DNA from: Haplodiscus bocki
Taxonomy: Eukaryota
Assembly: GCA_965655095.1 (NCBI GenBank)
Contig: OZ296654.1
Span: forward strand, 86,304,001-86,368,000
Direction: 5' to 3'
DNA: 64,000 nt
The notes beneath the pieces were generated by a model. It was not told where the DNA came from. It did not search any database and saw only the letters and a list, made by a program, of their open reading frames with translations. Both the position numbers and the translations under genes were made by a program. Below, piece by piece: positions 25,860-60,599 of the stretch (position 1 is the stretch's first letter; every line of letters starts with the position of its first letter).

Positions 25860-26460
25860 GGTTAGTGTTGTCAATGGTTGTCGGCGGCGTTTTCACAGGG
25901 GCACCTGCACGACAGAATTTTTGTTCGTACTGGTGTTTTCGGGGTTAGGGATAGTCGTATCTCAACTCAATAGAGGATTGATTTTCCCGAGGGAAGTTTC
26001 TCAAACGAAGTTATCGATTACAATCGTAGTTATTAGAACCCGCCATACACTTAGAGAGAGTGGGCAGTTCTTGTAATTGCATGTCTACAGAGAGGGGGAA
26101 TTTTCTACTTCTGACAAAAAAACTTCTATACGTGTTGTTTTGGGCCGAGTGGACCCTTTTCAGCGATTATTTCTGGACCTTTGCAAAGTTTTTAAACTGT
26201 CGATATTAGCATACCAACAAGTGCTTCTGTAAAGTATGACGGGAATACTCATCAATTTGAATGGTTTTAACTTTGCCGGGAATCGTACGCAGGCAAGAAC
26301 TTAGTTTCAACAAAAAGAGAACACTGAGTGCTTTGCTGCAAGCTGACTTTTTTATGATCAGCTCGCTTTCGTCCATAAGGGATCAGCAAACTTAAGTCTC
26401 TTTGCAAAACTTGTTTCTCTTTTTTTCTCGTTGCCGGAGAAGAAAAACATTTTGTCGCTA
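25860..26460 (-). mobile_element. LINE-D 3' part (post-RT region and C-terminus), left flank of the array
   Basis: QRDLSLLI, IPVILYRSTCWY, PLS, and terminal ILSCRCPC at ~25895-25918 are collinear with the C-termini of LINE-A and LINE-B. Confidence 0.78.
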
Positions 26461-29400
26461 CTGCCAAAGTCAAATGCGGGCATTTTTCTATGTTCAGTGA
26501 TAAAATGTTTCGGTAGCTCGATCTTTCATCTTTTATTACGTGTTAAGTCTATCTGGAATTGCAGAGTAGATTTATTAATAGAAAGTTTTTTTGCAAACTG
26601 AGGGCATAACAATGGTCCGCACGTCTTCCAGTTGATTTGCAGGTCGATGATGTAAACAACAAAGAGTAGACTGACAAAAAAAGACCTTTAGGGTATGCCA
26701 ATTGTAACTAGCACTTCTTGTGAAAAGATTCCATGAACACCAACACGTTGTGTTCTCGTGTTCAGTTGGCTAAGTAGAAGCGTGACTATGTCAATTTTTT
26801 TCATTGAACACCCCTTCTGTAGAACTTTGCCAGCAGATTGCCGTGATTGACATTATCAAGAGCTTTTTCGTAATCTGTGTATTTTACATGAATTCATGAA
26901 TTTCGTCGTCAAAATTTAGGGAATTGTGCACTTGGTCGAGAAAAATTAGTAAGTGAGTAGCACAAAAACGTTGTTTTCGAAGTTAAAAAACGGGAATTCA
27001 CTGAACTATGGCTTTAGAAAAATGTACAAGTTTTTGAAAAGACAAAGGTCAAGATTTTTCGATATGATGCTCAAGAGGGAGCCTTGTCTTCAATTCTGTA
27101 TATGCGAGTTGAACTACTTTCTGAAAGTTGGACTAACAATAGAGATCATTCGATTAGTAGAAAAAACACCTGATTGCTTCATTTTGCATAAAAAATTGCC
27201 CAATGATTTGCTGAGATTTCTTGGACATCGTTTAAATAAGTTAGCGGGTAACTCATCCGGACCATTGCGTTACTTAATATCAAGACTCTCACATTTATGC
27301 CGAACTTGCTTTCAGAGGCGTTAAAATCGAGCAGGCAATTCTCAGAAATGCATTTTCCATTAGGATGAAATCTGTAGATACGGCAAAAAAAGACGCAAAG
27401 AGTTTAGAGAACAGGTCACTTTCCGACAATTTTTCAATCGCCTGATCATTTCTGTAAATTATAAAAACAGAAAAACGAGTTGGAGGAGCAATAATCCTTC
27501 TAATGTGTTCGTTGACGGCTAATTGAAAGGCGCAAAAACGTTGTTGTCGAAGTCAAAACGGGAATTCAGTGAACTATGGATTTAGAAAAAAGTACAGGTG
27601 AATAAAAAGACAACGCTCAAGAACTTTGAATATAATGCTCAAAAGATAGACTTGTCAATAATTCTCTACGTTCGAATGCAAACCTTTTCTGAAAGCTGAG
27701 CTAACAATAAAGTTCTTCCGACAAGTAGGGAAGACACCTTTTTGAATAATTTTGTATATTCAAGTGCCCAATGATTTGCTGAGAGTTCTTGCACATCCTT
27801 TGAATAAGTTAGCGGGTTACTCATCTGGAGCAGTGCCTTTCCCATTATCAAGACTCTCACATATTGGCTGAATTTGCTCTTCAGAGACGCTAAAATCGAG
27901 CAAAAACTTTTCAGAATTGTATTTTTATTTTAGGATGAAGTCTGTAGAAACGGCAAAAAAATCAAAGAATTTAGAGAACAGGTCATTTTGCGACATTAAA
28001 TCAATCGCAATTTCAAGTCCGTAAACTATTGAAATGGGAATGCGAGTTACCTTGTTAGCTACTGCCAAAGTCAAGAGCCGGTGTTTTCTTTTGTTCACTG
28101 ATGAATTTTTTTGGTCAGTCCATCTTTCATCTCTTTTTACGTGTTAAAACTATCTGGAATTGCCAAGTAGATTTCTTATTCAAAAAAACTTTTACAAACT
28201 CAGCGCATAACAATGGTCGGCAAGTCTTACAGTTGATTCGCATGTCGTTGGTGAAAACAACGAAGAGTAGACTGACAAAGATAGACCCTTGTTGTACGCC
28301 ACTTGTAACTAGCACTTCTTGTGAAAAGATTCCATGAACCCCAACATGCTGTGTTCTGGTGTTCAGTTGAGTAAAAGCGACCGTAACTAATGGAATACTT
28401 TTCCCCGAACACCCCTTCTGTGGAGCTTTTGCAGCAGAATGCCGTGATTGCTTTTGTCAAGAGCTTTTTCGTAGTCTGTGTAAACTACATGAAGTTCGTC
28501 GTCAAAATTCATGGGAATGTGCAATTGGTCGAGAGAAATTAGTAATTGAAAAGCGCAGGAACGTTGTTTTGAAGTCAAAACGGGACTTCATTGAACTATG
28601 GCTTTAAAAAAGTGTTCAGATTAATGAACAGACAACGCTCAAACTTTTTCGATATCATGCTCAAGAAAGAGACTTGTCTTTAATTCTCCACATTCAAGTT
28701 CAACAATTTTTTGAAAGTTGGACTAACAATGGAATGCTTCCTACAAAAAGGTGAGGCACATGTTTGTTTAATTTTGCAAAATAAATTGAACAATGATTTG
28801 CTGAGAGTTCTTGGACTTCGTTGAAATAAGTTACCGTGTAACTCATCTAGACCAGTGCCTTTCTTAATAACGAAACTCACAAATATATGCTGAATTTGCT
28901 CTTCAGAGACGTTAAAATCGAGCAAAAACTTCTCAGCAATGCATTTTTTGTTGGGATGAAGTCTGTAGATACGGACAAAATAGAAGCAGAAAATTTAGAG
29001 AACAGGTCATTTTGCGGCATTAAATCACTCGCAATTTCAATTCCGTAAACTAATGAAATCGGAAAACGAGTTAATTGGTCGCTACTGCCAAAGTCAAGTG
29101 CGGGCGTTTTTTTTGTTCAGTGATAAACTGTTTCGGTCGCTCCAGCTTTCATCTTTTGTTACGTGTTAAGTCTATCTGGAATTGCAAGGTAGAATTTTTA
29201 ATCGAAATAGTTTTTCCAGATTCAGCGCATAACACTGGTCGGCACGTCTTACAAATGATTCGCATGTCGTTGATATAAGCAACGATTAGTAGAGTGACAA
29301 AGATAGACTTTTTATTGTACGCCAGTTGTAACTAGCACTTCTTGTGAAAAGTTTCCATGAACCCTAACACGCTGTGTTCTGGTGTTCAGCTGGCTAAGTA

Positions 29401-32400
29401 GGCGCGTAAATATTTGAATACGTCTCCCCGAACACCCATTCTGTAGAGCGTTTCCAGCAGAACAACGCCGTGATTGACATTATCAAGGGCGTTTTCGCAG
29501 TCTGTGTAATTTACATGAATTCATGAATTTCGTCGTCAAAATTTAGGGAATTGTGCACTTGGTCGAGAAAAATTAGTAAGTGAATAGCACAAAAACGTTG
29601 TTTTCGAAGTCAAAACGGGAATTCACTGAACTATGGCTTTAGAAAAATGTACAAGTTTTTGAAAAGACAAAGGTCAAGATTTTCCGATATGATGCTCAAG
29701 AAGGAGCCTTGTCTTCAATTCTGTATATGCGAGTTGAACTACTTTCTGAAAGTTGGACTAACAATAGAGATCATTCGATTAGTAGAAAAGACACCTGATT
29801 GTTTCATTTTGCATAAAAAATTTCCCAATGATTTGCTGAGATTTCTTGGACATCGTTTAAATAAGTTAGCGGGTAACTCATCCGGACCATTGCCTTACTT
29901 AATATCAAGACTCTCACATTTATGCCGAACTTGCTTTCAGAGGCGTTAAAATCGAGCAGGCAATTCTCAGAAATGCATTTTCCATTAGGATGAAATCTGT
30001 AGATACGGCAAAAAAAGACGCAAAGAGTTTAGAGAACAGGTCACTTTCCGACAATATTTCAATCGCCTGATCAATTCTGTAAATTATAAAAATGGAAAAA
30101 CGAGTTGGAGGAGCAATAAACCTTCTAATGTGTTCGTTGACGGCTAATTGTATAGCGCAAAAACGTTGTTGTCGAAGTCAAAACGGGAATTCAGTGAACT
30201 ATGGATTTAGAAAAAAGTACAGGTGAATAAAAAGACAACGCTCAAGAACTTTGAATATAATGCTCAAAAGATAGACTTGTCAATAATTCTCTACGTTCGA
30301 ATGCAAACCTTTTCTGAAAGCTGAGCTAACAATAAAGTTCTTCCGACAAGTAGGGAAGACACCTTTTTGAATAATTTTGTATATTCAAGTGCCCAATGAT
30401 TTGCTGAGAGTTCTTGCACATCCTTTGAATAAGTTAGCGGGTTACTCATCTGGAGCAGTGCCTTTCCCATTATCAAGACTCTCACATATTGGCTGAATTT
30501 GCTCTTCAGAGACGCTAAAATCGAGCAAAAACTTTTCAGAATTGTATTTTTATTTTAGGATGAAGTCTGTAGAAACGGCAAAAAAATCAAAGAATTTAGA
30601 GAACAGGTCATTTTGCGACATTAAATCAATCGCAATTTCAAGTCCGTAAACTATTGAAATGGGAATGCGAGTTACCTTGTTAGCTACTGCCAAAGTCAAG
30701 AGCCGGTGTTTTCTTTTGTTCACTGATGAATTTTTTTGGTCAGTCCATCTTTCATCTCTTTTTACGTGTTAAAACTATCTGGAATTGCCAAGTAGATTTC
30801 TTATTCAAAAAAAATTTACAAACTCAGCGCATAACAATGGTCGGCAGGTCTTACAGTTGATTCGCATGTCGTTGATGAAACCAACGAAGAGTAGACTGAC
30901 AAAGATAGACCCTTGTTGTACGCCACTTGTAACTAGCACTTCTTGTGAAAAGATTCCATGAACCCCAACATGTTGTGTTCTCGTGTTCAGTTGGCTAAGT
31001 AGGAGCGTCACTATTGGAATACTTTTCCCCGGAAAACCCCATCTGTAGAGCTTTTCCGGCAGAATGCCGCGATTAGTATTATCAAAACCCTTTTCGTAGT
31101 CTGTGTAAACTACATGAAGTTCGTCGTCAAAATTCATAGAAATGTGCAATTGGTCGAGAAAAATTAGTAATTGAAAAGCGCAGGAACGTTGTTTTGAAGT
31201 CAAAACGGACTTCATTGAACTATGGCTTTAGAAAAGTGTTCAGATTAATGAAAAGACAACGCTCAAAGTTTTTTGATATCATGCTCAAGAGAGAGACTTG
31301 TCTTTAATTCTCCACATTCAAGTTCAACAATTTTCTGAAAACTGGACTAACAATGGAATTCTTCCTACAAGTAGGTGAGGCACATGTTTGTTTAATTTTG
31401 CAAAATAAATTGCACAATGATTTGCTGAGAGTTCTTGGACTTCGTTGAAATAAGTTACCGTGTAACTCATCTGGACCAGTGCCTTTCTTAATAACGAAAC
31501 TCACAATCATATGCTGAATTTGCTCTTCAGAGACGTTAAAATCGAGCAAAAACTTCTCAGCAATGCATTTTTTGTTGGGATGAAGTTTGTAGATACGGAA
31601 AAAAAAGAAGCAGAAAATTTAGAGAACAGGTCATTTTGCGGCATTAAATCACTCGCAATTTCAATTCCGTAAACTATTGAAATCGGAAAACGAGTTAATT
31701 GGTCGCTACTGCCAAAGTCAAGTGCGGGCGTTTTTTTTGTTCAGTGATAAACTGTTTCGGTCGCTCCAGCTTTCATCTTTTGTTACGTGTTAAGTCTATC
31801 TGGAATTGCAAGGTAGAATTTTTAATCGAAATAGTTTTTCCAGATTCAGCGCATAACACTGGTCGGCACGTGTTACAAATGATTCGCATGTCGTTGATAT
31901 AAGCAACGATTAGTAGAGTGACAAAGATAGACTTTTTATTGTACGCCAGTTGTAACTAGCACTTCTTGTGAAAAGTTTCCATGAACCCTAACACGCTGTG
32001 TTCTGGTGTTCAGCTGGCTAAGTAGGCGCGTAAATATTTGAATACGTCTCCCCGAACACCCATTCTGTAGAGCGTTTCCAGCAGAACAACGCCGTGATCG
32101 ACATTATCAAGGGCTTTTTCGCAGTCTGTGTAATTTACATGAATTCATGAATTTCGTCGTCAAAATTTAGGGAATTGTGCACTTGGTCGAGAAAAATTAG
32201 TAAGTGAATAGCACAAAAACGTTGTTTTCGAAGTCAAAACGGGAATTCACTGAACTATGGCTTTAGAAAAATGTACAAGTTTTTGAAAAGACAAAGGTCA
32301 AGATTTTTCGATATGATGCTCAAGAGGGAGCCTTGTCTTCAATTCTGTATATGCGAGTTGAACTACTTTCTGAAAGTTGGACTAACAATAGAGATCATTC

Positions 32401-35400
32401 GATTAGTAGAAAAAACACCTGATTGCTTCATTTTGCATAAAAAATTGCCCAATGATTTGCTGAGATTTCTTGGACATCGTTTAAATAAGTTAGCGGGTAA
32501 CTCATCCGGACCATTGCGTTACTTAATATCAAGACTCTCACATTTATGCCGAACTTGCTTTCAGAGGCGTTAAAATCGAGCAGGCAATTCTCAGAAATGC
32601 ATTTTCCATTAGGATGAAATCTGTAGATACGGCAAAAAAAGACGCAAAGAGTTTAGAGAACAGGTCACTTTCCGACAATTTTTCAATCGCCTGATCATTT
32701 CTGTAAATTATAAAAACGGAAAAACGAGTTGGAGGAGCAATAATCCTTCTAATGTGTTCGTTGACGGCTAATTGAAAGGCGCAAAAACGTTGTTGTCGAA
32801 GTCAAAACGGGAATTCGGTGAACTATGGATTTAGGAAAAAGTACAGGTGAATGAAAAGACAACGCTCAAGAATTTTCAATATAATGCTGAAAAGATAGAC
32901 TTGTCAATAATTCTCTACATTCGAGTGCAAAACTTTTCTGAAAGTTGAGCTAACAATAAAGTTCATCCGACAAGTAGGGAAGACACCTATTTGATTAATT
33001 TTGTATATTGAAGTGCCCAATGATTTGCTGAGAGTTTTGCACATCCTTTGAATAAGTTAGCGGGTTACTCATCTGGACCAGTGCCTTTCCCATTATCAAG
33101 ACTCTCACATATTGGCTGAATTTGCTCTTCAGAGACGCTAAAATCGAGCAAAAACTTTTCAGAATTGTATTTTTATTTTAGGATGAAGTCTGTAGAAACG
33201 GCAAAAAAATCAAAGAATTTAGAGAACAGGTCATTTTGCGACATTAAATCACTCGCAATTTCAATTCCGTAAACTATTGAAATGGGAATGCGAGTTAACT
33301 TGTTAGCTACTGCCAAAGTCAAGAGCCGGCGTTTTCTTTTGTTCACTGATGAATTGTTTTGGTCAGTCCATCTTTCATCTCTTTTTACGTGTTAAGACTA
33401 TCTGGAATTGCCAAGTAGATTTTTTATTCAAAAAAAATTTTACAAACTCAGCGCATAATATTGGTCGGCAGGTCTTACAGTTGATTCGCATGTCGTTGAT
33501 GAAACCAACGAAGAGTAGACTGACAAAGATAGACCTTTGTTGTACGCCACTTGTAACTAGCACTTCTTGTGAAAAGATTCCATGAACCCCAACATGCTGT
33601 GTTCTCGTGTTCAGTTGGCTAAGTAGGAGCGTCACTATTGGAATACTTTTCCCCGGAAAACCCCATCTGTAGAGCTTTTCCGGCAGAATGCCGCGATTAA
33701 TATCATCAAAACCCTTTTCTTAGTCTGTGTAAACTACATGGAGTTCGTCGTCAAAATTCATGGAAATGTGCAATTGGTCGAGAGAGATTAGTAATGGAAA
33801 AGCGCAGGAACGTTGTTTTGAAGTCAAAACGGGACTTCCTTAAACTATGGCTTTAGAAAAGTGTTCAGATTCATGAAAAGACAACGCTCAAAGTTTTTCG
33901 ATATCATGCTCAAGAAAGAGACTTGTCTTTAATTCTCCACATTCAAGTTCAACAATTTTCTGAAAGTTGGACTAACAATGGAATTCTTCCTACAAGTAGG
34001 TGAGGCACATGTTTGTTTAATTTTGCAAAAATAAATTGCACAATGATTTGCTGAGAGTTCTTGGACTTCGTTGAAATAAGTTACCGTGTAACTCATCTGG
34101 ACCAGTGCCTTTCTTAATAACGAAACTCACAAAGATATGCTGAATTTGCTCTTCAGAGACGTTAAAATCGAGCAAAAACTTCTCAGCAATGCATTTTTTG
34201 TAGGGATGAAGTCTGTAGATACGGACAAAATAGAAGCAGAAAATTTAGAGAACAGGTCATTTTGCGGCAAGAAATCACTCGCAATTTCAATTCCGTAAAC
34301 TATTGAAATCGGAAATCGAGTTAATTGGTCGCTACTGCCAAAGTCAAGTGCGGGCGTTTTTTTTGTTCAGTGATAAACTGTTTCGGTCGCTCGAGCTTTC
34401 ATTTTTTGTTACGTGTTAAGTCTATCTGGAATTGCAAGGTAGATTTTTTAATCGAAAGAATTTTTCCAGATTCAGCGCCTAACACTGTTCGGCACGTCTT
34501 ACAAATGATTCGCATGTCGTTGATATAAACAACGATTAGTAGAGTGACAAAGATAGACTTTTTATTGTACGCCAGTTGTAACTAGCACTTCTTGTGAAAA
34601 GTTTCCATGAACCCTAACACGCTGTGTTCTGGTGTTCAGCTGGCTAAGTAGGCGCGTAAATATTTGAATACGTCTCCCCGAACACCCATTCTGTAGAGCG
34701 TTTCCAGCAGAGCAACGCCGTGATTGACATTATCAAGGGCGTTTTCGCAGTCTGTGTAATTTACATGAATTCATGAATTTCGTCGTCAAAATTTAGGGAA
34801 TTGTGCACTTGGTCGAGAAAAATTAGTAATTGAATAGCACAAAAACGTTGTTTTCGAAGTCAAAACGGGAATTCACTGAACTATGGCTTTAGAAAAATGT
34901 ACAGGTTTTTGAAAAGACAAAGGTCAAGATTATTCGATATGATGCTCAAGAGAGAGCCTTGTCTTCATTTCTGTATATTCGAGTTTAACAAATTTCTGAA
35001 AGTTGGACTAACAATAGAGATCATTCGATTAGTAGAAAAGACACTTGATTGTTTCATTTTGCATTAAAAATTGCCCATAGATTTGCTGAAATTTCTTGGA
35101 CATCGTTTAAATAAGTTAGCGGGTAACTCATCCGGACCAGTGCCTTACTTAATATCAAGACTCTCACATATTGGCTGAATTTGCTCTTCAGAGACGCTAA
35201 AATCGAGCAAAAACTTTTCAGATTTGTATTTTTATTCTGGGATGAAGTCTGTAGAAACGGCAAAAAAATCAAAGAATTTAGAGAACAGGTCATTTTGCGA
35301 CATTAAATCACTCGCATTTTCAATTCCGTAAAATATTGAAATGGGAATGCGAGTTAACTTGTTAGCTACTGGCAAAATCAAGAGCCGGCGTTTTCTTTTG

Positions 35401-47400: not shown

Positions 47401-50400
47401 AGTAGGCTGACCAGGTTAGACCCTTTTTGTACGCCACTTCTAACTAGCACTTCTTGTGAAAAGATTCCATGAACCCCAACATGCTGTGTTCTCGTGTTCA
47501 GTTGGCTAAGTAGGAGCGTCACTATTGGAATACTTTTCCCCGGAAAACCCCATCTGTAGAGCTTTTCCGGCAGAATGCCGCGATTAGTATTATCAAAACC
47601 CTTTTCGTAGTCTGTGTAAACTACATGAAGTTCGTCGTCAAAATTCATGGGAATGTGCAATTAGTCGAGAGAAATTATTAATTGAAAAGCGCAGGAGCGT
47701 TGTTTTGAAGTCAAAACGGGACTTCATTGAACTATGGCTTTAGAAAAGTGTTCAGATTAATGAAAAGACAACGCTCAAAGTTTTTCGATATCATGCTCAA
47801 GAAAGAGACTTGTCTTTAATTCTCCACATTCAAGTTCAACAATTTTCTGAAAGTTGGACTAACAATGGAATTCTTCCTACAAGTAGGTGAGGCACATGTT
47901 TGTTTAATTTCGCAAAATAAATTGCCCAATGATTTGCTGAGAGTTCTTGGACTTCGTTGAAATAAGTTACCGTGTAACTCATCTGGACCAGTGCCTTTCT
48001 TAATAACGAAACTCACAAATATATGCTGAATTTGCTCTTCAGAGACGTCAAAATCGAGCAGAAACTTCTCAGAAATGCAATTTTCCGTTTGTATGAAGTC
48101 TTTAGGTACGGAAAAAAAGAAAGAATTTACGGAACAGGTCATTTTGCGACAAAAAATCAGTCGCAATATCAGTTCTGTAAAACATTGAAATGGGAAAACT
48201 AGTTACTTTGTCCCTACTGCCCCAGTCAAGTGCGGGCGTTTTCTTTCGGTCACTGATAAATTGTTTCGGTCACTCCATCTTACAGCTTTTACTAGGTGTT
48301 ACGTCTATGTATAACAACTAAGTAGATTTTTTGTTCGAATCATCTTCTGCAAATTCAGCGCACAACAATGGTCGACACGAGTTACACTTGATTCGCATGT
48401 TGTTGATATACACAGCTAAGTGTAGACTGACAAAGATTGACCCTTGTTGTACGCCACTTGTAACTAGCACTTCTCGTGAAAAGGTTCAATGAACCCCAAC
48501 ACGCTGTGTTCTGGTGTTCAGTTAGCTAAGTAGGAGCGTCACTATTGGATTACTTTTCCCCCGAAAACCCCTTCTGTAGAGCTTTTCCGGCAGAATGCCG
48601 CGATTAATATTATCAAAACCCTTTTCGTAATCTGTGTAAACTACATGAATTTTTTCGTCAAAAGTTAAGGAAATGTGCCCTTGATCGAGAAAATTCAGTA
48701 ACTGAATAGCGCAAAAACGTTGTTTTTGAAGTTAAAACGGGAATTCAGTGAACGACGCTTTCAGAAAAATTTACAGGTTTTTGAAAAGACAACGCTCAAA
48801 AATTTTCGATATGATGCTCAAGAAAGAGACTTGTCTTTAATTCTCCACATTCAAGATCCACCTTTTTCTGAAAGTTGAGCTAACAACAGAGCTCTTCTGA
48901 CCAGTAAGGAAGACACCTGTTTGTTTAATTTTGTATAATAAAATGCCCAATGATTTGCTGTGAGTACACACACATAGTTTAAATAAATTAGCGGGTTACT
49001 CATCTGAACTAGTGCCTTTCCTAATATGAGAACTATCACATATTGGCTGAATTTGCTTTCACAGACGTTAAAATCGAGCAGACACTTCTCAGAAATGCAT
49101 TTTTCTTTTGGGATGAAATCTGTAGATATGGCTAAAACAGAAGCAAAGAACTTAGAGAACAGGTGACTTTGCGACATTAAGTCAGTCGCAATTTCAATTC
49201 TGTAAAATATTGAAATGGGAATACGAGTTAATTTGTCGCTACTGCCAAAGTCAAGGGCGGGCGTTTTCTTTCGTTCACTGATAAATTGTTTCGGTCACTC
49301 CATCTTTCATTTTTTTCTACGTGTGAAGTTTATCTGGAAATGCAAGGTTGATTTTTTAATCGAAATAAGTTTTACAAACTCAATGCATAACAATGGTCAG
49401 CACATCTCACAGTTGATTCGCATGTCGTTGATATAAACAGCGAAGAGTAGACTGACAAAGATAGACCCTTGTTGTACGCCACTTGTAACTAGCACTTCTC
49501 GTGAAAAGATTCAATGAACCCCAACACGCTGTGTTCTGGAGTTCAGTTGGCTAAGTACGACCGTAACTAATTGAATACTTTTCCCCGAACACCCCTTCTG
49601 TAGAAGTTTTGCAGCAGAATGCCGTGATTGATTTTATCAAGAGCTTTTCGTAATCTGTGTAAACTACATGAATTTCGTCATCAAAAATCAAGAAATTGTG
49701 AACTTGGTTGAGAAAATTTAGAAATTGAATTGCGCAAGAACGTTGTTTTTTAAGTCAAAAGGGGAAATCAATGAACTATGGCTGTGCAAAATTGTACAGG
49801 ATATTGATGAGACAACGCTCGAGAGTTTTCGTTATGATGCTCAAAAGAAACACTTGTATTTATTACTCTACATTCGAGTGCAACCTTTTCTGAAAGTTGA
49901 GCTGACAATAGAGTTCTTCTGACAAGTAAGGAAGACACCTGTTTGTTTAATGTTGTATAATAAATTGCCCAATGATTTGCTGTGACTTCTTACACATCGT
50001 TTATAAAAGTTAACGGGTAACTCATCTGGAACAGTGCCTTGCCTAATATCAAGACTATCACATATATGCTGATATTGCTCTTCAGAAACTTTAAAATTGA
50101 GCAGAAAATTTTCAGAAATGCAATCTTCCATTGAAACGAAGTCTGTAGATACGGCAAAAATTAAAGGAAAGACTTTAGAGGAAAGGTCACTTCGCAACAT
50201 TTAATCAGTCGCAATTTCGATTCTGTAAAATATTGAAGAGGGAATACGAGTTAATTTGTCGCAACTGCCAATGTCAAGTGCGGGCGTTTTTTTTTGTTCA
50301 CTGATAAATTGTTTCAGTCACTCCATCTTCCATTTTTTTTACGTGTTAAGTCTATCTGGAATTGCCAGGTAGATATTTTATTCAAAATAAATTTTACAAA

Positions 50401-53400
50401 CTCAGCGCATAACAATGATTGGCACGTCTTACAGTTGATTCGCATGTCGTTGGTAAAAACAGCGCAGAGTAGACTGACAAAGATAGACCCTTGTTGTACG
50501 GCACTTGTAACTACCACTTCTCGTGATAAGCTTCCGTGAACCCCAGCACGATGTGTTCTGGTCTTCATTTGGCTAAGTAGGACCGTAACCAATCGAATAG
50601 TTTCCCCCCAAAAACCATTTCTGTAGAGATTTTCCCGCAGAATGCCGCGATCGATATTATCAAAACCTTTTTCGTAATCTGTGTAGACAACACGAATTTC
50701 GTCGTCAAAATTTTGGGAATTGTGCACTTGGTCGAAAAAAATTAGTAAATGAATAGCGCAAAAACGTTGTTTTCGGAGTCAAAACGGGAATTCACTGAAC
50801 TAAGGCTTTGGAAAATTGTACAGGTTATTGGAAAGACAACGCTCAACAATTTTCGATATGATGCTCAAGATAGAGACTTGTCTTTAATTCTCCACAATCA
50901 AGTTCAACCCTTTTCTGAAAGTTGGACTAACAATAGAGATCATCCAAGTATTAGAAAAGACACCTGTTTGTTTCATTTTGCATAATAAATGGTCCAATGA
51001 TTTGGTGAGAGCTCTTGCACATCGTTTAAATAAGTTAGCGGGTATTTCATTTTGACCAGTGCCTCACCTAATATCAAGACTCTCACATATATGCCGAATT
51101 TGCTTTCAGAGACGTTAAAATCGAGCAGACACTTCTCAGAAATGCATTTTTCTTTTGGGATGAAATCTGTAGATATGGCTAAAACAGAAGCAAAGAACTT
51201 GGAGAACAGGTGACTTTGCGACATTAAGTCATCGCAATTTCAATTCTGTAAAATATTGAAATGGGAATACGAGTTAATTTGTCGCTACTGCCAAAGTCAA
51301 GGGCGGGCGTTTTCTTTCGTTCACTGATAAATTGTTTCGGTCACTCCATCTTTCATCTTTTACTACGTGTTAAATCTATCTGGAATCGCAAGGTAGATTT
51401 CTTAATCGAAATAAGTTTTGCAAATTCAGTGCATAAAAATGGCCGGCACGTCTTAGAGTTGATTCGCATATCGTTGATATAAACAACGAAGAGTAGACTG
51501 GCAAAGATAGACCCTTGTTGTAGGCCACTTGTAACTAGCACTTCATGTGAAAAGATTCCATCAAACCAACAGGCTGTGTTCTGGTGTTCAGTTGGCTAAG
51601 TACGACCGTAACTAATCGAATTCTTTTCCCTGAACACCCCTTCTGTAGAGCTTTTCCAGCAGAATGCTGTGATTAATGTTATCACGGGTTTCTTCGTAAT
51701 CTGTGTATTTTACATGAATTCATGACTTTTGTCGTCAAAATTTAGGGAATTGTGCACTTGGTCGAGAAAAAATAGTAATTGAAAAGCGCAAAAACGTTGT
51801 TTTTGAAGTCAAAACGGGAATTCACTGAACTATGGCTTTGGAAAAATGTACGGGTTAATAAAACGACAACGCTGAAGAATTTTCAATATGATGCTCAAGA
51901 GAGAGACTTGTCTTCAATTCTCTACATTCGAGTGCAAACCTTTTCTGAAAGATGAACTAACAATGGAATTCTTCCTACAAGTAGGTGAGGCACATGTTTG
52001 TTTAATTTTGCATAATAAATTGGCCAATGATTTGCTGAGAGTTCTTGGACTTCGTTTAATTAAGTTAGCGTGTAACTGATGTGGACCAGTGCCTTTCTTA
52101 GAAACGAAACTCACACATATATGCTGAATTTGCACTTCAGAGACGTTAAAATCGAGCAGATACTTCTCAGCAATGCATTTTTCGTTGGGATCAAGTCTGT
52201 AGATACGGAAAATATAGAAGCAGAAAATTTAGAGAACAGGTCATTTTGCGACATTAAATCAGTCGCAATTTCAATTCCGTAAACTTTTGAAATGGCAATA
52301 CAAGTTAATTGGTCGCTACTGCCAAAGTTAAGTGCGGGCGTTTTTTTTGTTCAGTGATAAACTGTTTCGGTCGCTCCAGCTTTCATCTTTTGTTACGTGT
52401 TAAGTCTATCTGGAATTGCAAGGTAGATTTTTTAATCGAAATAGTTTTTCCAGATTCAGCGCATAACACTGGTCAGCACATCTCACAGTTGATTCGCATG
52501 TCGTTGATATATACAACGAGAAGTAGACTGACCAGGATAGACCCTTGTTGTTCGCCACTTGTAACTAGCAATTCTTGTGAAAAGATTCCATGATTCCCAA
52601 CATGCTGTGTTCTGGTGTTCAGTTGGGTAAAAGCGACCGTAACTAATGGAATACTTTTCCCCGAACAACCTTTCTGTGGAGCTTTTGCAGCAGAATGCCG
52701 TGATTGCTTTTATCAAGAGCTTTTTTGTAGTCTGTGTAAACTACATGACATTCGTCATCAAATTTCATGGAAACGTGCAATTGGTCGAGAAAAAATAGTA
52801 ATTGAAAAGCGCAAGAACGTTGTTGTTGAAGTCAAAAGGGGAATTCATTGAACTACGGCTTTAGAAAAGTGTTTAGATTAATGAAAAGTCAACGCTCAAA
52901 ATTTTTCGATATCATGCTCAAGAAAGAGACTTGTCTTTATTTCTCCACATTCAAGTTCAACAATTTTCTGAAAGTTGGACTAACAATAGAGATCGTCCGA
53001 TTAGTTGAAAAGACACCTGTTTGTTTCATTTTGCATGATAAATTGCCCAAAGATTTGCTGAGAGCTCTTGGACATCGTTTAAATAAGTTAGCGGGTATTT
53101 CATTTTGATCAGTGCCTCACCTAATATCAAGACTGTCACATATATGTCGAATTTGCTTTCAGAGACGTTAAAATCGAGCAGACACTTCTCAGAAATCCAT
53201 TTTTCCTTTGGGATGAATCTGTAGATACGGCAAAAACAGAAGCAAAGAACTTAGAGAACAGGTGACTTTGCGACATTAAGTCAGTCGCAATTTCAATTCT
53301 GTAAAATATTGAAATGGGAATACGAGTTAATTTGTCTCTACTGCCAACGTCAAGTGCGGGCGTTTTCTTTTTTTCACTGATAAATTGTTGCGGTCACTCC

Positions 53401-56400
53401 ATCTTTCATCTTTTACTACGTGTTAAATCTATCTGGAATCGCGAGGTAGATTTCTTAATCGAAATAAGTTTTTCAAATTCAGTGCGTAACAATGACCGGC
53501 ACGTCTTAGAGTTGATTCGCATATCTTTGATATACACAACGAAAAGTAGACTGACCAAGATAGACCCTTCTTGTACGCCACTTCTAACTAACACTTCTTG
53601 TGAAAAGACTCCATGAACCCGAACTTGCTGCGTTCTGGTGTTCAGTTGGCTAAGTACGAGCGTAACTAATGGAATACTTTTACCCGAACACGCTTCTGTA
53701 GAGCTTTTCCAGCAGAATGCTGTGATTGATGTTATCACGGGTTTCTTCGTAATCTGTGTATTTTACATGAATTCATGAATTTTGTCGTCAAAATTTAGGG
53801 AATTGTGCACTTGGTCGAGAAAAAATAGTAATTGAAAAGCGCAAAAACGTTGTTTTCGAAGTGAAACGGGAATTCACTGAACTATGGCATTGGAAAAATG
53901 TACGGGTTAATAAAACGACAACGCTGAAGAATTTTCAATATGATGCTCAAGAGAGAGACTTGTCTTCAATTCTCTACATTCGAGTGCAAACCTTTTCTGA
54001 AAGTTGAACTAACAACGGAATTCTTCCTACAAGTAGGTGAGGCACATGTTTGTTTAATTTTGCATAATAAATTGCTCAATGATTTGCTGAGAGTTCTTGG
54101 ACTTCGTTTAATTAAGTTAGCGTGTAACTGATGTGGACCAGTGCCTTTCTTAGAAACGAAACTCACACATACATGCTGAATTTGCACTTCAGAGACGTTA
54201 AAATCGAGCAGAAACTTCTCAGCAATGCATTTTTCGTTGGGATGAAGTCTGTAGATACGGAAAATATAGAAGCAGAAAATTTAGAGAACAGGTCATTTTG
54301 CGACATTAAATCAGTCGCAATTTCAATTCCGTAAACTTTTGAAATGGGAATACAAGTTAGTTGGTCGCTACTGCCAAAGTTAAGTGCGGGCGTTTTTTTT
54401 GTTCAGTGATAAACTGTTTCGGTCGCTCCAGCTTTCATCTTTTGTTACGTGTTAAGTCTATCTGGAATTGCAAGGTAGATTTTTTAATCGAAATAGTTTT
54501 TCCAGATTCAGCGCATAACACTGGTCAGCACATCTCACAGTTGATTTGCATGTCGTTGATATATACAACGAAAAGTAGACTGACCAGGATAGACCCTTGT
54601 TGTTCGCCACTTGTAACTAGCAATTCTTGTGAAAAGATTCCATGATTCCCAACATGCTGTGTTCTGGTGTTCAGTTGGGTAAAAGCGACCGTAACTAATG
54701 GAAGACTTTTCCCCGAACAACCTTTCTGTGGAGCTTTTGCAGCAGAATGCCGTGATTGCTTTTATCAAGAGCTTTTTTGTAGTCTGTGTAAACTACATGA
54801 CATTCGTCGTCAAATTTCATGGAAACGTGCAATTGGTCGAGAAAAAATAGTAATTGAAAAGCGCAAGAACGTTGTTGTTGAAGTCAAAACGGGAATTCAT
54901 TGAACTACGGCTTTAGAAAAGTGTTTAGATTAATGAAAAGACAACGCTCAAAATTTTTCGATATCATGCTCAAGAAAGAGACTTGTCTTTATTTCTCCAC
55001 ATTCAAGTTCAACAATTTTCTGAAAGTTGGACTAACAATAGAGATCGTCCGATTAGTTGAAAAGGCACCTGTTTGTTTCATTTTGCATAATAAATTGCCC
55101 AAAGATTTGCTGAGAGCTCTTGGACATCGTTTAAATAAGTTAGCGGGTATTTCATTTTGATCAGTGCCTCACCTAATATCAAGACTGTCACATATATGTC
55201 GAATTTGCTTTCAGAGACGTTAAAATCGAGCAGACACTTCTCAGAAATCCATTTTTCCTTTGGGATGAAATCTGTAGATACGGCAAAAACAGAAGCAAAG
55301 AACTTAGAGAACAGGTGACTTTGCGACATTAAGTCAGTCGCAATTTCAATTCTGTAAAATATTGAAATGGGAATACGAGTTAATTTGTCTCTACTGCCAA
55401 CGTCAAGTGCGGGCGTTTTCTTTTTTTCACTGATAAATTGTTGCGGTCACTCCATCTTTCATTTTTTATTACTTGTTAAGTCTATCTGGAACTGCAAGGT
55501 AGACTTTTTATTTGAAGAAAATTTCGCAAAATTAGCGCATAACAATGCTCGGCTTGTCTTACAGTTGGTTCGCATGTCGTTGATATAAACAGCGAAGAGT
55601 AGACTGACAAAAAGAAACCCTTTCTGTACGCCACTTCTAACTAGCACTTCTTGTGAAAAGATTCCATCAACCCAACAGTCTGTGTTCTGGTGTTCAGTTG
55701 GCTAAGTACGACTGTAACTAATCGAATACTTTTCCCCGAACACCCCTTCTGTAGAGTTTTTCCAGCAGAATGCTGTGATTGACGTTATCACGGGCTTTTT
55801 CGTAATCTGTGTATTTTACATGATTTCATGAATTTCGTCGTCAAAATTTAGGGAATTGTGCACTTGGTCGAAAAAAATTAGTAAGTGAATAGCGCAAAAC
55901 CGTTGTTTCCAAAGTCAAAATGGGAATTCAGAGAACTATGGCTTAAGAAAAATGTACAGGGTATTGAAAAGACAACGCTCAAGAAACTTCGATATGATGC
56001 TCAAAAGAGAAGTTTGTCAATATTTCGCTACATTCGAGTGCAACCGTTTTCTGATAGTTGAGCTAACAGTAAAGTTCTTCCGACAAGTAAGGAAGACACC
56101 TGTTTTTTTTTAATTTTGTATAATACATTGCCCAATGATTTGCTGTGAGTTCTTGGACATCGTTTAAATAATTTAGCTGGTAACTCAACTGGACCGGTGC
56201 TTTTCCTAATTTCCAGATTTTCACAAATAGGCTGAATTTGCTCTTCAGAGACGTTAAAATCGAGCAGAAACTTCACAGTAATGCAATTTCCTTTTGGGAT
56301 GAATTCTGTAGATACAGCAAAAACAGAAGCAAAGAATTTAGAGAACAGGTCACTTTGCGACATTAAGTCAGTGGCAGTTTCAATTCTGGAAATTATTGAA

Positions 56401-58470
56401 ATGGGAATACGAGTTAAGTTGTCTCTACTGCCAACGTCAAGTCCGGGCGTTTTCTTTTGTTCACTGATAAATTGTTGCGGTCACTCCATCTTTCATCTTT
56501 TCTTACTTGTTAAGTCTATCTGGAATTGGAAGGTAGACTTTTTAATCGAAAGATATTTCGCAAAGTCAGCGCATGACAATGCTCAGCCTGTCTTACAGTT
56601 GGTTCGCATGTCGTTGATATAAACACCGAAGAGTAGACTGTCAAAAAGAGACCCTTTTTGTACGCCACTTCTAACTAGCACTTCTTGTGAAAAGATTCCA
56701 TGAACCCCAACTTGCTGTGTTCTGGTGTTCAGTTGGCTAAGTACGAGCGTAACTAACTGAATACTTTTCCCCGAACACCTCTTCTGTAGAGCTTTTCCAG
56801 CAAATGCCGTGATTGACAATACCAAGAGCTTTTTCGCAATCTGTGTAACCTACATGATTTTCGTCGTCAAATTTCAAGCAAATGTTCGCTTGGTCGTGAA
56901 AATATAGTGATTGAGTAGCGCAGAAACGTTGTTTTTGAAGTCAAAACGGGATTGCAGTGAACTCGGGCTTTAGAAATTTGTACAGGTTAATGAAAAGACA
57001 ACTCTCAAGAATTTTCGTTATGATGCTCAAGAGAAAGACTTGTCTTTAGTTCCCTACATTCGAGTTCAACCCTTTTCTGCAAGTTGACCTAGCAAAAGAG
57101 TTCTTCCGAGAAAAAAGGAAGACACCTGTTTGTTTAATTTTGCATAATAATTTGCACAATGATTTGCTGAGAGCTCTGGGACATCGTTTAAACAAGTTAG
57201 CGGGTAACTCATCTGAACCAGTGCCTTTCCTAATATCAAAACTCTCACATATACGCTGAATTTGCTCTTCAGAGACGTTAGAATAGTGCAAAAACTTCTG
57301 AGAAATGCACTCCTCCATTGGTATGAAGTCTGTAGATACGGCAAAAACAGAAGCAAACATTTTAGAGATTCGGTCACTTTGCGACGTTAAGTCAGTCGCA
57401 GTTTCAGTTCTGTAAAATATTGGAAAGGGAATATGAGTTAGTTGGTCGCCACTGCCAAAGTCAAGTGCGGGCGTTGTCTTTTGTTCACTGTTAAATTGTT
57501 TCGGTCAATCCATCTTTCAACTTTTTCTGCGTATGAAGTCTATCTGGAATTGCAAGGTAGATTTTTTAATCGAAATAGGTTTTGCACACTCAGTGCATAA
57601 CAATGGTCAGAACGTCTTACAGTTGATTCGCATGTCGTGGATATAAACAGCGAAGAGTAGACTGACAAAGATAGATCCTTGTTGTACGCCACTTGTAACT
57701 AGCACTTCTCGTGAAAAGATTCAATGAACCCCAACCCGCTGTTATGGTGTTCAGTTGGCTAAGAACGACCGTAACTAACGGAATACTTTTCCCCGAACAC
57801 TCCTTCTGTAGAGCTTTTGCAGCAGAATGCCGTGATTGATTTTATCAAGAGCTTTTTCGTAATCTGTGTAAATTACATGAATTTCGTCGTCAAAATTTAG
57901 GGAAATGTGCACTTGGTCGTGAAAATTTAGTGATTGAAAAACGCAAAAACGTTATTTTCGAGGTCAAAACATGAATTCCCTGAACTATGGCTTTACAAAT
58001 GTGTACAGGTTGATAAAAGCACACCGCTCAAGATTTTTCAAGTTGATGCTCAAGAGAGAGGCTGGTCTTCCATTCTCTACGTTCGAGTTCAACCCTTTTC
58101 TGAAAGCTGAACCAACAATAGAGATCATCCGATAAGTAGGAAAGACACCAGTTTGTTTCATTTTGTATACTAAATTGCCGAATGATTTGCTGTGAGCTCT
58201 TGGACATCGTTTAAATAAGTTAGCGGGTAACTCAACTGGACCAGTGCCTTTCCTAATATCCTGACTTTCACATATAGGCTGAATTTGCTCTTCAGAGACG
58301 TTAAAATCGAGCAGAAATTTCTCATAAAATCATTTTCCCCTGGGGATGAAGTCTGTAGATACGGCAAAAACAGAAGCAAAGAATTTAGAGAACAGGTCAC
58401 TTTGCGACATTAAGTAAGTCGCACTTTCAATTCTGTAAAATTTTGAATTGGGATTACGAGTTAATTTGAA
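26460..58470 (-). repeat. ~32-kb tandem array of LINE RT-derived units (29 x ~1.02 kb + 4 x ~0.58 kb)
   Basis: Landmark ACTGCCAAAGTC (or a close variant) recurs at ~26460, 28061, 29084, 30686, 31708, 33309, 34334, 35368, 36393, 37412, 38436, 39460, 40479, 41503, 42528, 43548, 45148, 46169, 47196, 48216, 49241, 50264, 51286, 52318, 53340, 54370, 55393, 56427, 57451; full units carry degenerate KGTGPDEL, YTDYEKA(L/F)D and SGVQQGS...LLF..(F/Y)INDM. Confidence 0.97.
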
Positions 58471-59460
58471 GGTTCAAAAATCCTTGCAAAGCTAACTTGT
58501 AGATCTTGTATGGTTATTAGGTTTCGTTTGTTATTAGGTTGATTGCGTTTGGTTGTTTTTAGACGTTTAATCATATTGGAAGTACTAGGAAAATCCCAAG
58601 TCGACAAATGGGAGCGATGCATCTTCCTACGTGGAATTGTCTGGAGAACGAACAATTTAATCCTACTATATCATTTTTCAATATGAAAGGTTATATTGCT
58701 CCAGCATAGCCCTGAAAAAGGTTTTTCCTGAATTAGGGCATTAAGCCTAACGAAATCCCCATTGCAATAACTGAAGACAGCTGCTGGCTTCCTAGGTCTA
58801 AAATAAAGTGAATTCAAATCCTAATATGCATTTTTAGTTAACATGCTGTAGTGATTGCATAAGGAGTTCATTTGGTTGTGATCAAGCCTGCAAGAAGTAG
58901 CTTAGAGGCCTTCGCTAACGAAGATAAGATCCAATATATCGGTGACTGCGGTGGTTATATCTACTAGACTGTTACTTTTTCCATCCGTTCAAGATACTTT
59001 CCTTCAACTTCTTTTTTCCGCCGATCTGGCAACTTCCATCATGCCCAGGACATAAAGTTTTTTCAAATTGCTTGTCATCTACCCACTCTGCTGTATTGAA
59101 AAAGTATCAGAAGGCCCTGATGAGCCGCTCTGCCAGACAAACCCTTGCCCTACACCTGTTGATCCTTCATAAAGACCATCATCAAAAACAATTACTTCGA
59201 TTGAATTCAAAAATCTGAGTAACAGAAAAACAAATTTAAAACAGCTCAAATTACAACTGAAGCTGTTGGAGCAAGATGAAGCGAAGTGGTTCCCAAGCTC
59301 CACACCGATCAACTTCTCCCGGAACTCCTGGAATGGTTTTGCCACGAGGATCGCAACCTCTGTTCAGAAAAGTCTAGAATCTAGAAGGATTTTCTTTCAC
59401 ATGTGTTTTTCCTCCAGGAAAACCTGATCAAGTTGCTGCTCCTAGCTGGTCATGTTTTCC
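58470..59460 (-). mobile_element. LINE-D 5' part (endonuclease and linker), right flank of the array
   Basis: IPRRKMHRSHLSTW...TSNMIKRL resembles the LINE-B linker VPIRTKNRQLLPPW; TTAVTDILDLIFVS (~58910-58960) and LDHNQ are decayed endonuclease motifs. Confidence 0.72.
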
Positions 59461-60599
59461 GAGATAACAAGGCATTTGAATTTTGACGGTTTTGTCTCCT
59501 GGTTTTCTCTTGTTGGAATTGTCGTGTTGTGTGAAAGTTCCGATTCAGAAATTAGCTGTTTTTTTATTCCGGCTGGCGATTTATGAATGGATGAGTTTTC
59601 GAAATTAGTTGAGTCGCCTGGAGTTTTTTTGAAAGTGCAGTCGCGACATTTTTGTGCCATGATTGCTTGATCAGGCTAAAACTGAAATATGACTGATATG
59701 AATATGTCAAAATGTATTCCGGTTGACTACAGCGTTTTATCGTACACACCGATGGTTTAGTTTGACAGGGTTCTTTGATCGATTATCCCGCTTCCTTGTC
59801 GTTGCAGAACTTTTGCTGTTCGAGGACCCAATGAGTATGTCTTGGTATTTTTTGTCATTTCCAATTCCAGATTTTGAATGTGTTGGCCAATCAAAAGTTG
59901 CATTCAATCTTTTTCTATTACAGTGTGTTCAAGTTGCATAGTGGCAAGTCAAAGATAGATTGGGCTGGGAAGGAGCAGCTTGGCCGAAGTTGTCTTTGTG
60001 ATGAAAATGATAAATCATGTCAGTATTGCGAACAATACTGTTATTATGTGATTTAATTTAACTTCTGTCAATATTCTCAAATCAATTGACAACAGCCGTG
60101 TTCCTGGAAGTAGGGTCTTTCCATTTTGTGCGTTGTTGATGGAAGTGCAACCAAAATGTCGCTGCAAGACAAAAAAAGCTGTTGCAGAACTGATTGACTC
60201 CAGCGACCGAGAGGTTTGTGTGTGCGGATCACCTTAACTTCAGAAACGGTGTTGCCGTTCCGTCCTCGATTTTGTCTGCTCAGTCTCCTGTGTTTGAGGT
60301 TGAGCCATCTTGTGTGGTATTTTGGCTATCACGGTCGGATTGTCGGTAGATGCAGATGTGGAGTCATTACGGCCGGGTTTGAGTTTATTGAGTGTGGCCT
60401 CGCCATCATATCAGGAAATGATTGTTTTGTGTGATCAGAGGATAATTGGCGACGCTTTTGTTGGAATTGAGCTTAACTGTCATATCGGTGCACCAGTGGC
60501 TGTTGCCGTAACGATAAAAGGTAGGTTTTCATCTGAAATTTTTCGTGGGCCTTGTGAAACGTATGTGATTTTAAGTAGTTGAGGTTTATGTAAGACGGA

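What the first reader, a model, noticed from the sequence alone, without database searches (positions are those of the whole stretch)
25860..59460. The array grew inside one LINE copy from a microhomology junction
Seen: the left flank continues as the LINE C-terminus and the right flank as linker plus endonuclease, so collapsing the array to one unit gives one collinear ORF2. The unit junction GAGTTAATTTG|TCGCTACT is a fusion of the right boundary (GAGTTAATTTG AAGG, ~58458) and the left boundary (CATTTTG TCGCTACT, ~26448) through a shared TTTG. Inference: a microhomology-mediated tandem duplication or rolling-circle event, and this locus is probably the birthplace of the satellite.
Basis: partly seen in the sequence, partly recalled or inferred. 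Interest (0 to 1): 0.7.

Follow-up and report, generated by a model that had tools for sequence, protein, structure and literature searches.

The report
Tandem array born inside dead LINE
A 1-kb inner piece (the reverse-transcriptase core) of one long-dead, truncated jumping gene (a LINE) was copied head to tail about 30 times on the spot, giving a 32-kb repeat block found only at this locus; it is a very clean but ordinary example of repeat DNA born from a transposon.

Summary
Window 26455-58468 is a 32,014-bp array of 29 full units of about 1,023 bp and 4 partial units. It sits inside one 5'-truncated non-LTR retrotransposon copy on the minus strand (25676 to about 58985).

- **Collinearity:** dispersed copies of the same roughly 3.8-kb family (PHD-like, endonuclease, RT) align without a break over left flank, one unit and right flank.
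- **One origin:** units form a 100/100 clade. All share a lost RT catalytic DD motif and two frameshifting insertions, so the copy was already dead before it was amplified. The left half of the leftmost unit is sister to all other units.
- **Same age:** flank branch lengths (0.15-0.20) match array stem plus depth (0.077 + 0.08-0.11).
- **Junction:** both breakpoints carry a pre-existing TTTG (chance of 4 bp or more is about 0.02). The junction occurs nowhere else in the 1.5-Gb assembly.
- **Secondary junction:** it carries a 42-bp filler copied from a neighbouring repeat family, with AGTT microhomology.

Corrections: the right flank is mostly linker, with only the last 30-45 residues of the endonuclease. 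58986-59460 is unique non-LINE DNA. The "satellite" is a one-locus array.

Tandem duplication versus rolling circle is unresolved. Earlier scan notes, untested here, report many similar arrays elsewhere in this genome. This is a known kind of event, so interest is low to moderate.

The parts
25676..25692 (-). 3' end of the LINE copy: short CTG/CTA-type repeat tail (AGTAGTAGCAGTAGCAG on the + strand)
   Evidence: Homology of all dispersed copies starts at window 25676-25685. Sequence read. An unrelated high-copy repeat ends at about 25673-25677.
25676..26454 (-). Left flank: 3' part of the LINE copy (region after the RT core, C-terminus and 3' UTR), single copy
   Evidence: Aligns continuously with dispersed copies into the first unit. 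Terminal branch 0.20 in a star-like family tree, with nearest relatives L022, L002 and L001.
26451..26454 (.). TTTG at the left breakpoint (one copy of the microhomology)
   Evidence: Also present in the family at this site (CGTTTTG|TCGCTAC).
26455..58468 (-). Tandem array: 29 full units of about 1,023 bp plus 4 partial units. The unit is the RT core of the LINE, about positions 1999-3007 of the roughly 3.8-kb family.
   Evidence: Units are 79-100% identical, mean 85%. RVT_1 matches weakly in the units themselves (E 6.5e-4 to 0.035) and clearly in the homologous stretch of dispersed copies (E 3.2e-14). Units form one clade at 100/100.
26455..34328 (.). Three copies of a 2,624-bp higher-order repeat (full unit, 42-bp filler, partial unit, full unit). 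A fourth, older copy lies at 43543-46163.
   Evidence: Unit start spacing. Identity matrix: u03/u05 99%, u04/u06 97%, u16 96-97% to u03/u05.
27478..27519 (+). 42-bp filler at the secondary junction (unit end | filler | unit position 489). Also at 30103-30144, 32727-32768 and 44567-44608.
   Evidence: 38/42 identical to window 23997-24038, E 6.8e-10 within the window. AGTT is shared by the unit end and the source. The source belongs to a repeat family with at least 30 genomic copies at 84-91% identity.
23997..24038 (+). Nearest copy of the filler's source sequence, 2.4 kb left of the array, inside the neighbouring high-copy repeat
58465..58468 (.). TTTG at the right breakpoint (second copy of the microhomology)
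   Evidence: Also present in the family at this site (GATTTG|AAGGTTC).
58469..58985 (-). Right flank: LINE linker between endonuclease and RT, plus the last 30-45 residues of the endonuclease domain. The copy is 5'-truncated at about 58955-58985.
   Evidence: DNA collinearity to 58954-58966. tblastn of family endonuclease pieces reaches 58985. Exo_endo_phos_2 matches in the homologous family pieces. Terminal branch 0.15.

Best explanation
A non-LTR retrotransposon (LINE) of a roughly 3.8-kb family inserted here on the minus strand as a 5'-truncated copy of about 2.3 kb. The family encodes a PHD-like N-terminus, an APE-type endonuclease and an RT, and ends in a short-repeat 3' tail. The copy sat as single-copy dead DNA and decayed. 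It lost the RT catalytic Asp-Asp and gained two frameshifting micro-insertions and about 25 fixed substitutions per kb.

A DNA-level event then duplicated an internal 1,024-bp segment (the RT core) head to tail. The new joint formed where the two breakpoints shared TTTG. This fits microhomology-mediated end joining between sister chromatids, or a replicative template switch.

The dimer then grew by unequal exchange or replication slippage over a long time into 29 full and 4 partial units. Later multi-unit duplications produced higher-order repeats. One further rearrangement joined a unit end to unit position 489 through AGTT microhomology and a 42-bp copied filler.

Shown: the collinearity, the single origin from an already dead copy, the uniqueness of the junction, and the stepwise growth. 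Inferred: the repair pathway of the first step. The LINE origin is probably incidental, since the process acted on DNA and not through retrotransposition.
For: - **Collinearity.** Dispersed copies L001-L030 align over left flank, one unit and right flank without rearrangement.
- **Family identity.** RVT_1 E 3.2e-14, Exo_endo_phos_2 E 1.5e-8, PHD-like E 4.6e-5. RT matches to solved LINE-1, R2 and group II RTs.
- **Single origin.** Array units form one clade at 100/100 with stem 0.077. Deep unit lineages are 0.08-0.11 long. The flanks have terminal branches of 0.20 and 0.15, about stem plus depth, and the same nearest relatives L002, L001 and L022.
- **Edge unit.** In the left 450 columns the array is still one clade (stem 0.070). 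The edge unit u01, physically continuous with the left flank, is sister to all other units (95/84) with a 0.115 terminal branch.
- **Dead before amplification.** All 29 units share loss of the catalytic DD (family CADD, units CAEF/CAES/CANF/CADF), a 7-bp and an 8-bp insertion, and 25 derived substitutions.
- **Microhomology.** TTTG lies at both breakpoints and in the family at both sites. The chance of 4 bp or more for segment lengths of 900-1100 bp in this copy is 0.021.
- **Unique junction.** 19-mer hits with up to 1 mismatch, 28-mer hits with up to 3 mismatches (18 hits, reversed control 0), and 200-bp junction-spanning hits all fall in C7:86,330,451-86,362,468. Hits elsewhere stop at the junction.
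- **Stepwise growth.** Hierarchical tree, four copies of a 2.6-kb higher-order repeat, near-identical unit pairs 2, 3 and 10 units apart, and old un-homogenised units at the right edge.
- **Second junction.** AGTT microhomology and a 42-bp filler.
- **Literature.** Pol theta-dependent tandem duplications of 1 kb and more, with junction microhomology or templated inserts, are documented experimentally (PMC7368036).
Against: - Four bases of microhomology is only moderately unlikely by chance (about 2%). It may not have been causal.
- Part of the 0.077 stem could be subfamily difference rather than decay after insertion. The shared inactivating changes argue against that being all of it.
- No target-site duplication could be found to prove that both flanks come from one insertion event. 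The left side abuts another repeat and the right side is unique DNA.
- The right edge unit is not basal in the right-half tree.
- The filler's source cannot be pinned to the neighbouring copy, because other genomic copies match equally well. An insertion followed by deletions could also leave such a remnant.
Confidence: 0.82

Rival explanations
1. Rolling-circle or eccDNA route. The 1,024-bp segment was excised as a circle closed at the TTTG microhomology, replicated by rolling circle into a concatemer, and reinserted by homologous recombination into its own locus.
For: It gives exactly the same junction and the same collinear flanks. The base of the unit tree is close to a polytomy, with internodes of 0.007-0.036 against tips of 0.08-0.11. 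That would fit an early burst. Satellite repeats on eccDNA, and reintegration, have been proposed in Drosophila (PMC7403614).
Against: Nothing in the sequence requires it. u01-left is resolved as sister to the rest, and much of the array grew later by multi-unit duplication. A single burst therefore does not explain the present structure. No copy landed anywhere else in the genome, although eccDNA reinsertion would be expected to seed other loci at times.
Confidence: 0.1
2. The duplication arose during retrotransposition. The reverse transcriptase switched template, primed by microhomology, back to a downstream position on the RNA, so the copy was inserted already carrying a tandem repeat.
For: RT template jumps use short microhomologies (general knowledge of non-LTR RTs). 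The junction is internal to the element.
Against: All units share loss of the catalytic DD motif and two frameshifting insertions. An RNA from an active master should not carry these, so they point to a period of decay as a single copy before the duplication. The stem of 0.07-0.077 is about 40% of the lineage's total length.
Confidence: 0.03
3. Double insertion or recombination between two separate LINE copies. Two copies of the family landed next to or inside each other, and unequal recombination between them made the array.
For: TE tandem dimers made by double insertion are common starting material for satellites in Drosophila (PMC5932611).
Against: Double insertion joins a 3' end to a 5' end. 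Here the joint is between two internal positions, with no tail or flank between them. Units, including the edge units, share one set of private mutations. Both flanks meet the array exactly where the family sequence continues.
Confidence: 0.02
4. Assembly artefact. The array, or its copy number, was produced by mis-assembly of dispersed LINE copies.
Against: Units differ by up to 21% and form a structured tree distinct from every dispersed copy. The array holds a private junction, private indels and a private filler. There is no N inside the array.
Confidence: 0.03

Closest known systems
LINE ORF2-derived satellites (chicken HinfI/SCR1 from CR1; Phodopus PROsat and Phoca Pvc20 from L1 ORF2), as tabulated in PMC9659126
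   Same: Tandem repeat whose monomer is a coding-region fragment of a non-LTR retrotransposon.
   Different: Those are multi-locus or abundant satellites known mainly by sequence similarity. Here the array is confined to one locus and still sits between the rest of its parental copy, with both breakpoints readable.
TE tandem dimers and arrays made by double insertion (McGurk & Barbash 2018, PMC5932611)
   Same: A transposon sequence becomes the seed of a tandem array that then expands by recombination.
   Different: The junction there is element end to element start and is produced by transposition. Here it joins two internal positions of an already dead copy, so it was produced by DNA repair or replication.
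Microhomology-mediated tandem duplications (Pol theta-mediated end joining; FoSTeS/MMBIR)
   Same: Head-to-tail duplication of about 1 kb with no loss at the flanks, short microhomology at the novel joint, and a second joint with a copied filler (PMC7368036; PMC7403614 discusses FoSTeS/MMBIR for satellite junctions).
   Different: The pathway is inferred from old scars only. The filler (42 bp) comes from a repeat with many copies, and its template lies at least 2.4 kb away.
Other one-locus kb-unit arrays from dead LINE pieces reported by this scan in the same genome (s1-359328, s1-356337, s1-381250, s1-382577, s1-354063)
   Same: The same kind of object: an internal piece of one dead LINE amplified in place (AI notes, not tested here).
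   Different: Different LINE segments and loci. None shares this unit or junction, since the unit search found only single dispersed copies.

Membership tests
Non-LTR retrotransposon (APE-type LINE) | Reverse transcriptase domain | tested here: met
   RVT_1 E 3.2e-14 in the homologous stretch of copy L002. Weak matches in the window units themselves, E 6.5e-4 to 0.035. RT matches to solved structures.
Non-LTR retrotransposon (APE-type LINE) | Apurinic-type endonuclease N-terminal to the RT | tested here: met
   Exo_endo_phos_2 E 1.5e-8 (L007) and 5.7e-6 (L031) in family copies. The window copy keeps only the last 30-45 residues.
Non-LTR retrotransposon (APE-type LINE) | Common 3' end with a tail and variable 5' truncation | tested here: met
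   All copies share the 3' end at window 25676-25685, with a CTG/CTA-type tail. The window copy stops at family position about 1457 of about 3800.
Non-LTR retrotransposon (APE-type LINE) | Target-site duplication flanking the copy | tested here: inconclusive
   No direct repeat at the two ends. The left side abuts another repeat and the right side is unique DNA.
Non-LTR retrotransposon (APE-type LINE) | Assignment to a named clade (CR1/L2, RTE and others) | not tested
   The word search found only this genome's own predicted proteins. The atlas search gave generic RT clusters. The clade is left open.
TE-derived satellite DNA | Head-to-tail units homologous to part of a transposon | tested here: met
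TE-derived satellite DNA | Abundant or multi-locus repeat family | tested here: not met
   The junction and high-identity units occur only at C7:86.33-86.36 Mb. This is a single 32-kb array.
Microhomology-mediated tandem duplication | Novel joint at a short identity shared by the two breakpoints, with flanks intact | tested here: met
   TTTG at both sites, older than the event. Chance of 4 bp or more is 0.021. No bases lost or gained at either flank.
Microhomology-mediated tandem duplication | Templated insertion at a joint | tested here: inconclusive
   The primary joint has none. The secondary joint has a 42-bp copy of a nearby repeat with AGTT microhomology, but at least 30 other genomic copies match equally well.
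Double-insertion TE tandem | Joint between the 3' end and the 5' end of the element | tested here: not met
   The joint links family positions about 1999 and 3007, both internal.
Rolling-circle / eccDNA-derived array | Circular molecules carrying the junction; burst-like star phylogeny | not testable with these tools
   No eccDNA data. The tree is partly star-like at the base but hierarchical overall.

The most novel reading that the evidence does not exclude
This array is one readable instance of a genome-wide tendency in this species to amplify arbitrary kb-sized segments in place through microhomology-primed template switching or Pol theta-type joining. The primary TTTG joint and the filler-bearing secondary joint would then be its signature. 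A survey of the many similar arrays reported in this genome would show the same scars and identify the pathway that gives birth to macrosatellites.
Probability: 0.3. Interest if true: 0.55.

Novelty: new member of a known kind. Interest (0 to 1): 0.3.

Why it matters
Satellites derived from transposons are well known, but the first duplication step is rarely preserved. In this array, both breakpoints, the parental copy, the order of events (insertion, decay, duplication, expansion, higher-order repeats) and a second scarred junction can all be read from one locus. The array therefore works as a worked example, and as one data point for a survey of junctions. It does not change current views on its own. 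It supports the idea that DNA repair or replication errors can seed kb-unit arrays from dead transposon DNA, without any transposition.

Tried and rejected
1. **Near-matches elsewhere.** I tried to fetch the 19-mer hits with 2 mismatches outside the array, including three at 3.13-kb spacing on C1055 and two on C12. I tested them with a longer degenerate 28-mer instead. None matched, and their number is no higher than the reversed-pattern control, so I treat them as chance.
2. **Reads.** I did not try another route.
3. **Target-site duplication.** The search led nowhere. An unrelated high-copy repeat abuts the 3' tail and the 5' side is unique DNA.
4. **LINE clade.** The word-based protein search returned only this genome's own predicted proteins. 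The atlas search returned generic RT clusters.
5. **Endonuclease beyond 58985.**
6. **TRF.** It missed the array because its period limit is 500.
7. **Consensus.** Comparisons used natural copies only.
Full report
**What is there.** Window 26455-58468 (32,014 bp) is a head-to-tail array. TRF missed it because its period limit is 500. The repeat finder and BLAST with a reference unit show 29 full units of 1,017-1,031 bp and 4 partial units covering unit positions 489-1019. The left boundary reads CATTTTG|TCGCTACT at 26454|26455. The right boundary reads GAGTTAATTTG|AAGG at 58468|58469. The unit joint GAGTTAATTTG|TCGCTACT or near variants occurs 21 times, against 0.03 expected. All joints are listed. 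The array contains no N.

**The unit and both flanks belong to one LINE family and are collinear.** A search of the 1.5-Gb genome with one unit found about 37 dispersed single copies at 65-76% identity. I joined left flank, one unit and right flank in a script and aligned the result to these copies. They match without rearrangement from window 25676-25685, through the unit, to window about 58954-58966. Several do so in a single continuous alignment across both boundaries.

A longer copy (L032) shows that the family is about 3.8 kb long. The window holds family positions 23-2345, counted from the 3' end on the window's + strand. Only positions 795-1803 are amplified, and the remaining 5' part is absent from the window.

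Stop-free pieces of natural copies give these Pfam matches:

| Domain | E-value | Note |
|---|---|---|
| RVT_1 | 3.2e-14 | reverse transcriptase |
| Exo_endo_phos_2 | 1.5e-8 and 5.7e-6 | endonuclease |
| PHD-like finger | 4.6e-5 | N-terminal, just under Pfam's cut-off |

The RT piece also matches solved RTs, including LINE-1 ORF2p and R2. Units in the window still give weak RVT_1 matches (E 6.5e-4 to 0.035) and carry the motifs VVYTDYEK.FD and SGV.QGS.

The element therefore lies on the minus strand:
- Its 3' end, with a CTG/CTA-type tail, is at 25676-25692.
- The left flank is its 3' part.
- The unit is the RT core.
- The right flank is the linker between endonuclease and RT.

At protein level, homology to the endonuclease reaches only window 58860-58985, which is the last 30-45 residues of that domain. 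The DNA alignment decays at 58955-58975. Beyond that point there is no similarity to the family, and the sequence is single-copy in the genome.

**One copy, amplified after it had died.**

*Tree of units.* In a maximum-likelihood tree of the 29 full units and 13 dispersed copies, the units form one clade with 100/100 support on a stem of 0.077 substitutions per site. The deepest unit lineages are 0.08-0.11 long.

*Age of the flanks.* The two flanks, placed in trees with the dispersed copies, have terminal branches of 0.20 and 0.15. That is about stem plus depth. Their nearest relatives are the same as for the units: L002, L001 and L022.

*Edge unit.* The leftmost unit is a mosaic. Its left 450 bp or so match no other unit better than 81-91%, while its right half is 98-100% identical to another unit. 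In a tree of the left 450 columns the array is still one clade (stem 0.070). This left half, which is physically continuous with the left flank, is sister to all other units (95/84) with a terminal branch of 0.115. This is what growth in place predicts. It argues against an array imported from another copy.

*Shared inactivating changes.* All 29 units share 25 derived substitutions, a 7-bp and an 8-bp insertion, and loss of the catalytic Asp-Asp. The family has CADD, and the units have CAEF, CAES, CANF or CADF. RNA from an active master should not carry these changes. The copy therefore decayed for a substantial time before the first surviving duplication, roughly 40% of its lineage length. 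Part of the stem could still be subfamily difference.

This timing disfavours a reverse-transcriptase template switch at insertion. The internal-to-internal joint excludes the double-insertion route of McGurk and Barbash (PMC5932611).

**The junction.** In dispersed copies both breakpoint sites are ordinary continuous family sequence...CGTTTTG|TCGCTACTGCC... and ...ACGAGTTGATTTG|AAGGTTCG.... TTTG therefore stood at both sites before the event, and the joint can be placed anywhere within those 4 bases. No base was lost or added at either flank.

I measured the chance of microhomology over all position pairs 900-1100 bp apart in the collapsed copy. Four or more bases occur with frequency 0.021. 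This is suggestive rather than proof. Some joints read TTGG or other variants, but the deep lineages and the right boundary read TTTG.

**Uniqueness.**
- The 19-mer joint with up to 1 mismatch occurs only in this array. The 2-mismatch hits elsewhere are no more numerous than for the reversed control pattern (45 against 66).
- A 200-bp query centred on a joint gives 28 full-length matches, all in C7:86,330,451-86,362,468. Matches elsewhere stop at the joint.
- A degenerate 28-mer with up to 3 mismatches gives 18 hits, all in the array, against 0 for the control. This removes the suspicious 2-mismatch sites on C1055 and C12, which I could not fetch.

The repeat is therefore a one-locus array in this assembly, not a dispersed satellite. 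'Birthplace' is correct but nearly trivial.

**How it grew.** Units are 79-100% identical, with a mean of 85%. The tree is close to a polytomy at its base and hierarchical above it.
- The left 7.9 kb is three copies of a 2,624-bp higher-order repeat (full unit, 42-bp filler, partial unit, full unit).
- A fourth, older copy of that repeat lies at 43543-46163.
- Near-identical pairs lie 2, 3 and 10 units apart: u24/u26, u10/u13, u11/u14 and u9/u19.
- The right-hand units are old and not homogenised.

This is the pattern of long-continued unequal exchange or slippage with multi-unit steps, after an early phase of rapid increase.

**A second scarred joint.** There a unit end ...ACGAGTT is followed by 42 bp and then unit position 489. 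The 42 bp match window 23997-24038 at 38/42 (E 6.8e-10 within the window). AGTT is shared between the unit end and the source.

The source belongs to the high-copy repeat that abuts the LINE's 3' tail. At least 30 other genomic copies match the filler equally well, at 84-91%. The neighbouring copy, 2.4 kb from the array, is the simplest template but is not proven to be the source. An insertion followed by deletions remains possible.

Microhomology plus a copied filler is the known scar of Pol theta-mediated end joining or replicative template switching. Pol theta-dependent tandem duplications of 1 kb and more have been shown experimentally (PMC7368036). FoSTeS/MMBIR has been invoked for satellite junctions (PMC7403614).

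**Comparison with what is known.** Satellites derived from LINE coding regions are on record: chicken HinfI/SCR1 from CR1, and Phodopus PROsat and Phoca Pvc20 from L1 ORF2 (PMC9659126). Reviews already propose microhomology-mediated joining between sister chromatids as a source of the first duplication (PMC9659126; PMC12628747).

This case is a new member of that kind. What stands out is only that the parental copy, both breakpoints and the order of events are all preserved.

Earlier notes of this scan report many similar one-locus arrays made from dead LINE pieces elsewhere in this genome. I did not test them. None shares this unit, because the unit search found only single dispersed copies. 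If those notes hold, the LINE origin is incidental, and the interesting question is why this genome amplifies kb-sized segments so often.

**Limits.**
- The LINE clade was not resolved.
- No target-site duplication was found.
- Tandem duplication and rolling-circle reinsertion cannot be told apart from this sequence.
- The N run at 13380-13515 was left untouched.

Noticed in passing
window 23997-25675: A high-copy repeat (over 1,300 first-look candidates genome-wide, 77-85% identity) ends at about 25673-25677, directly against the LINE's 3' tail. The 42-bp filler inside the array belongs to this repeat family.
   Followed up: partly
window 21954-22262 (-): A 102-aa ORF with a PHD finger (PF00628, E 9.5e-7). 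It is weakly similar (29% identity, E 2e-4) to the PHD-like N-terminus of the LINE family, but it lies beyond the LINE's 3' end, so it belongs to another element or gene.
   Followed up: partly
window 23004-23669 (-): A 221-aa ORF with a weak DUF1759 (gag-like) match, E 1.4e-3, and a CCHC-like knuckle. It is probably part of the neighbouring repeat.
   Followed up: no
window 15669-16492 (-): Remnant of a second, distantly related LINE endonuclease (tblastn, 23-33% identity to this family's endonuclease pieces).
   Followed up: no
window 58510-58570: Just right of the array, about 60 bp of the LINE linker is replaced by a locally duplicated GGTTATTAGGTT...-type stretch not seen in other family copies. 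This causes the small gap in all BLAST alignments.
   Followed up: partly
window 9660-9927: A small tandem repeat of 68 bp x 4 (or 135 bp x 2), 86-88% matches.
   Followed up: no
window 60000-64000: A marked composition shift to the right of the locus: GC skew +0.18 to +0.22 and AT skew -0.14 to -0.22, against about 0.03 in the array.
   Followed up: no
G000:C1055:16633-22911: Three 2-mismatch matches to the 19-mer joint at 3.13-kb spacing on an unplaced contig. They do not match the longer 28-mer, so this is probably an unrelated tandem repeat. The contig could not be fetched.
   Followed up: partly
window 13380-13515: A run of 136 N (gap or masked). It was left untouched.
   Followed up: no
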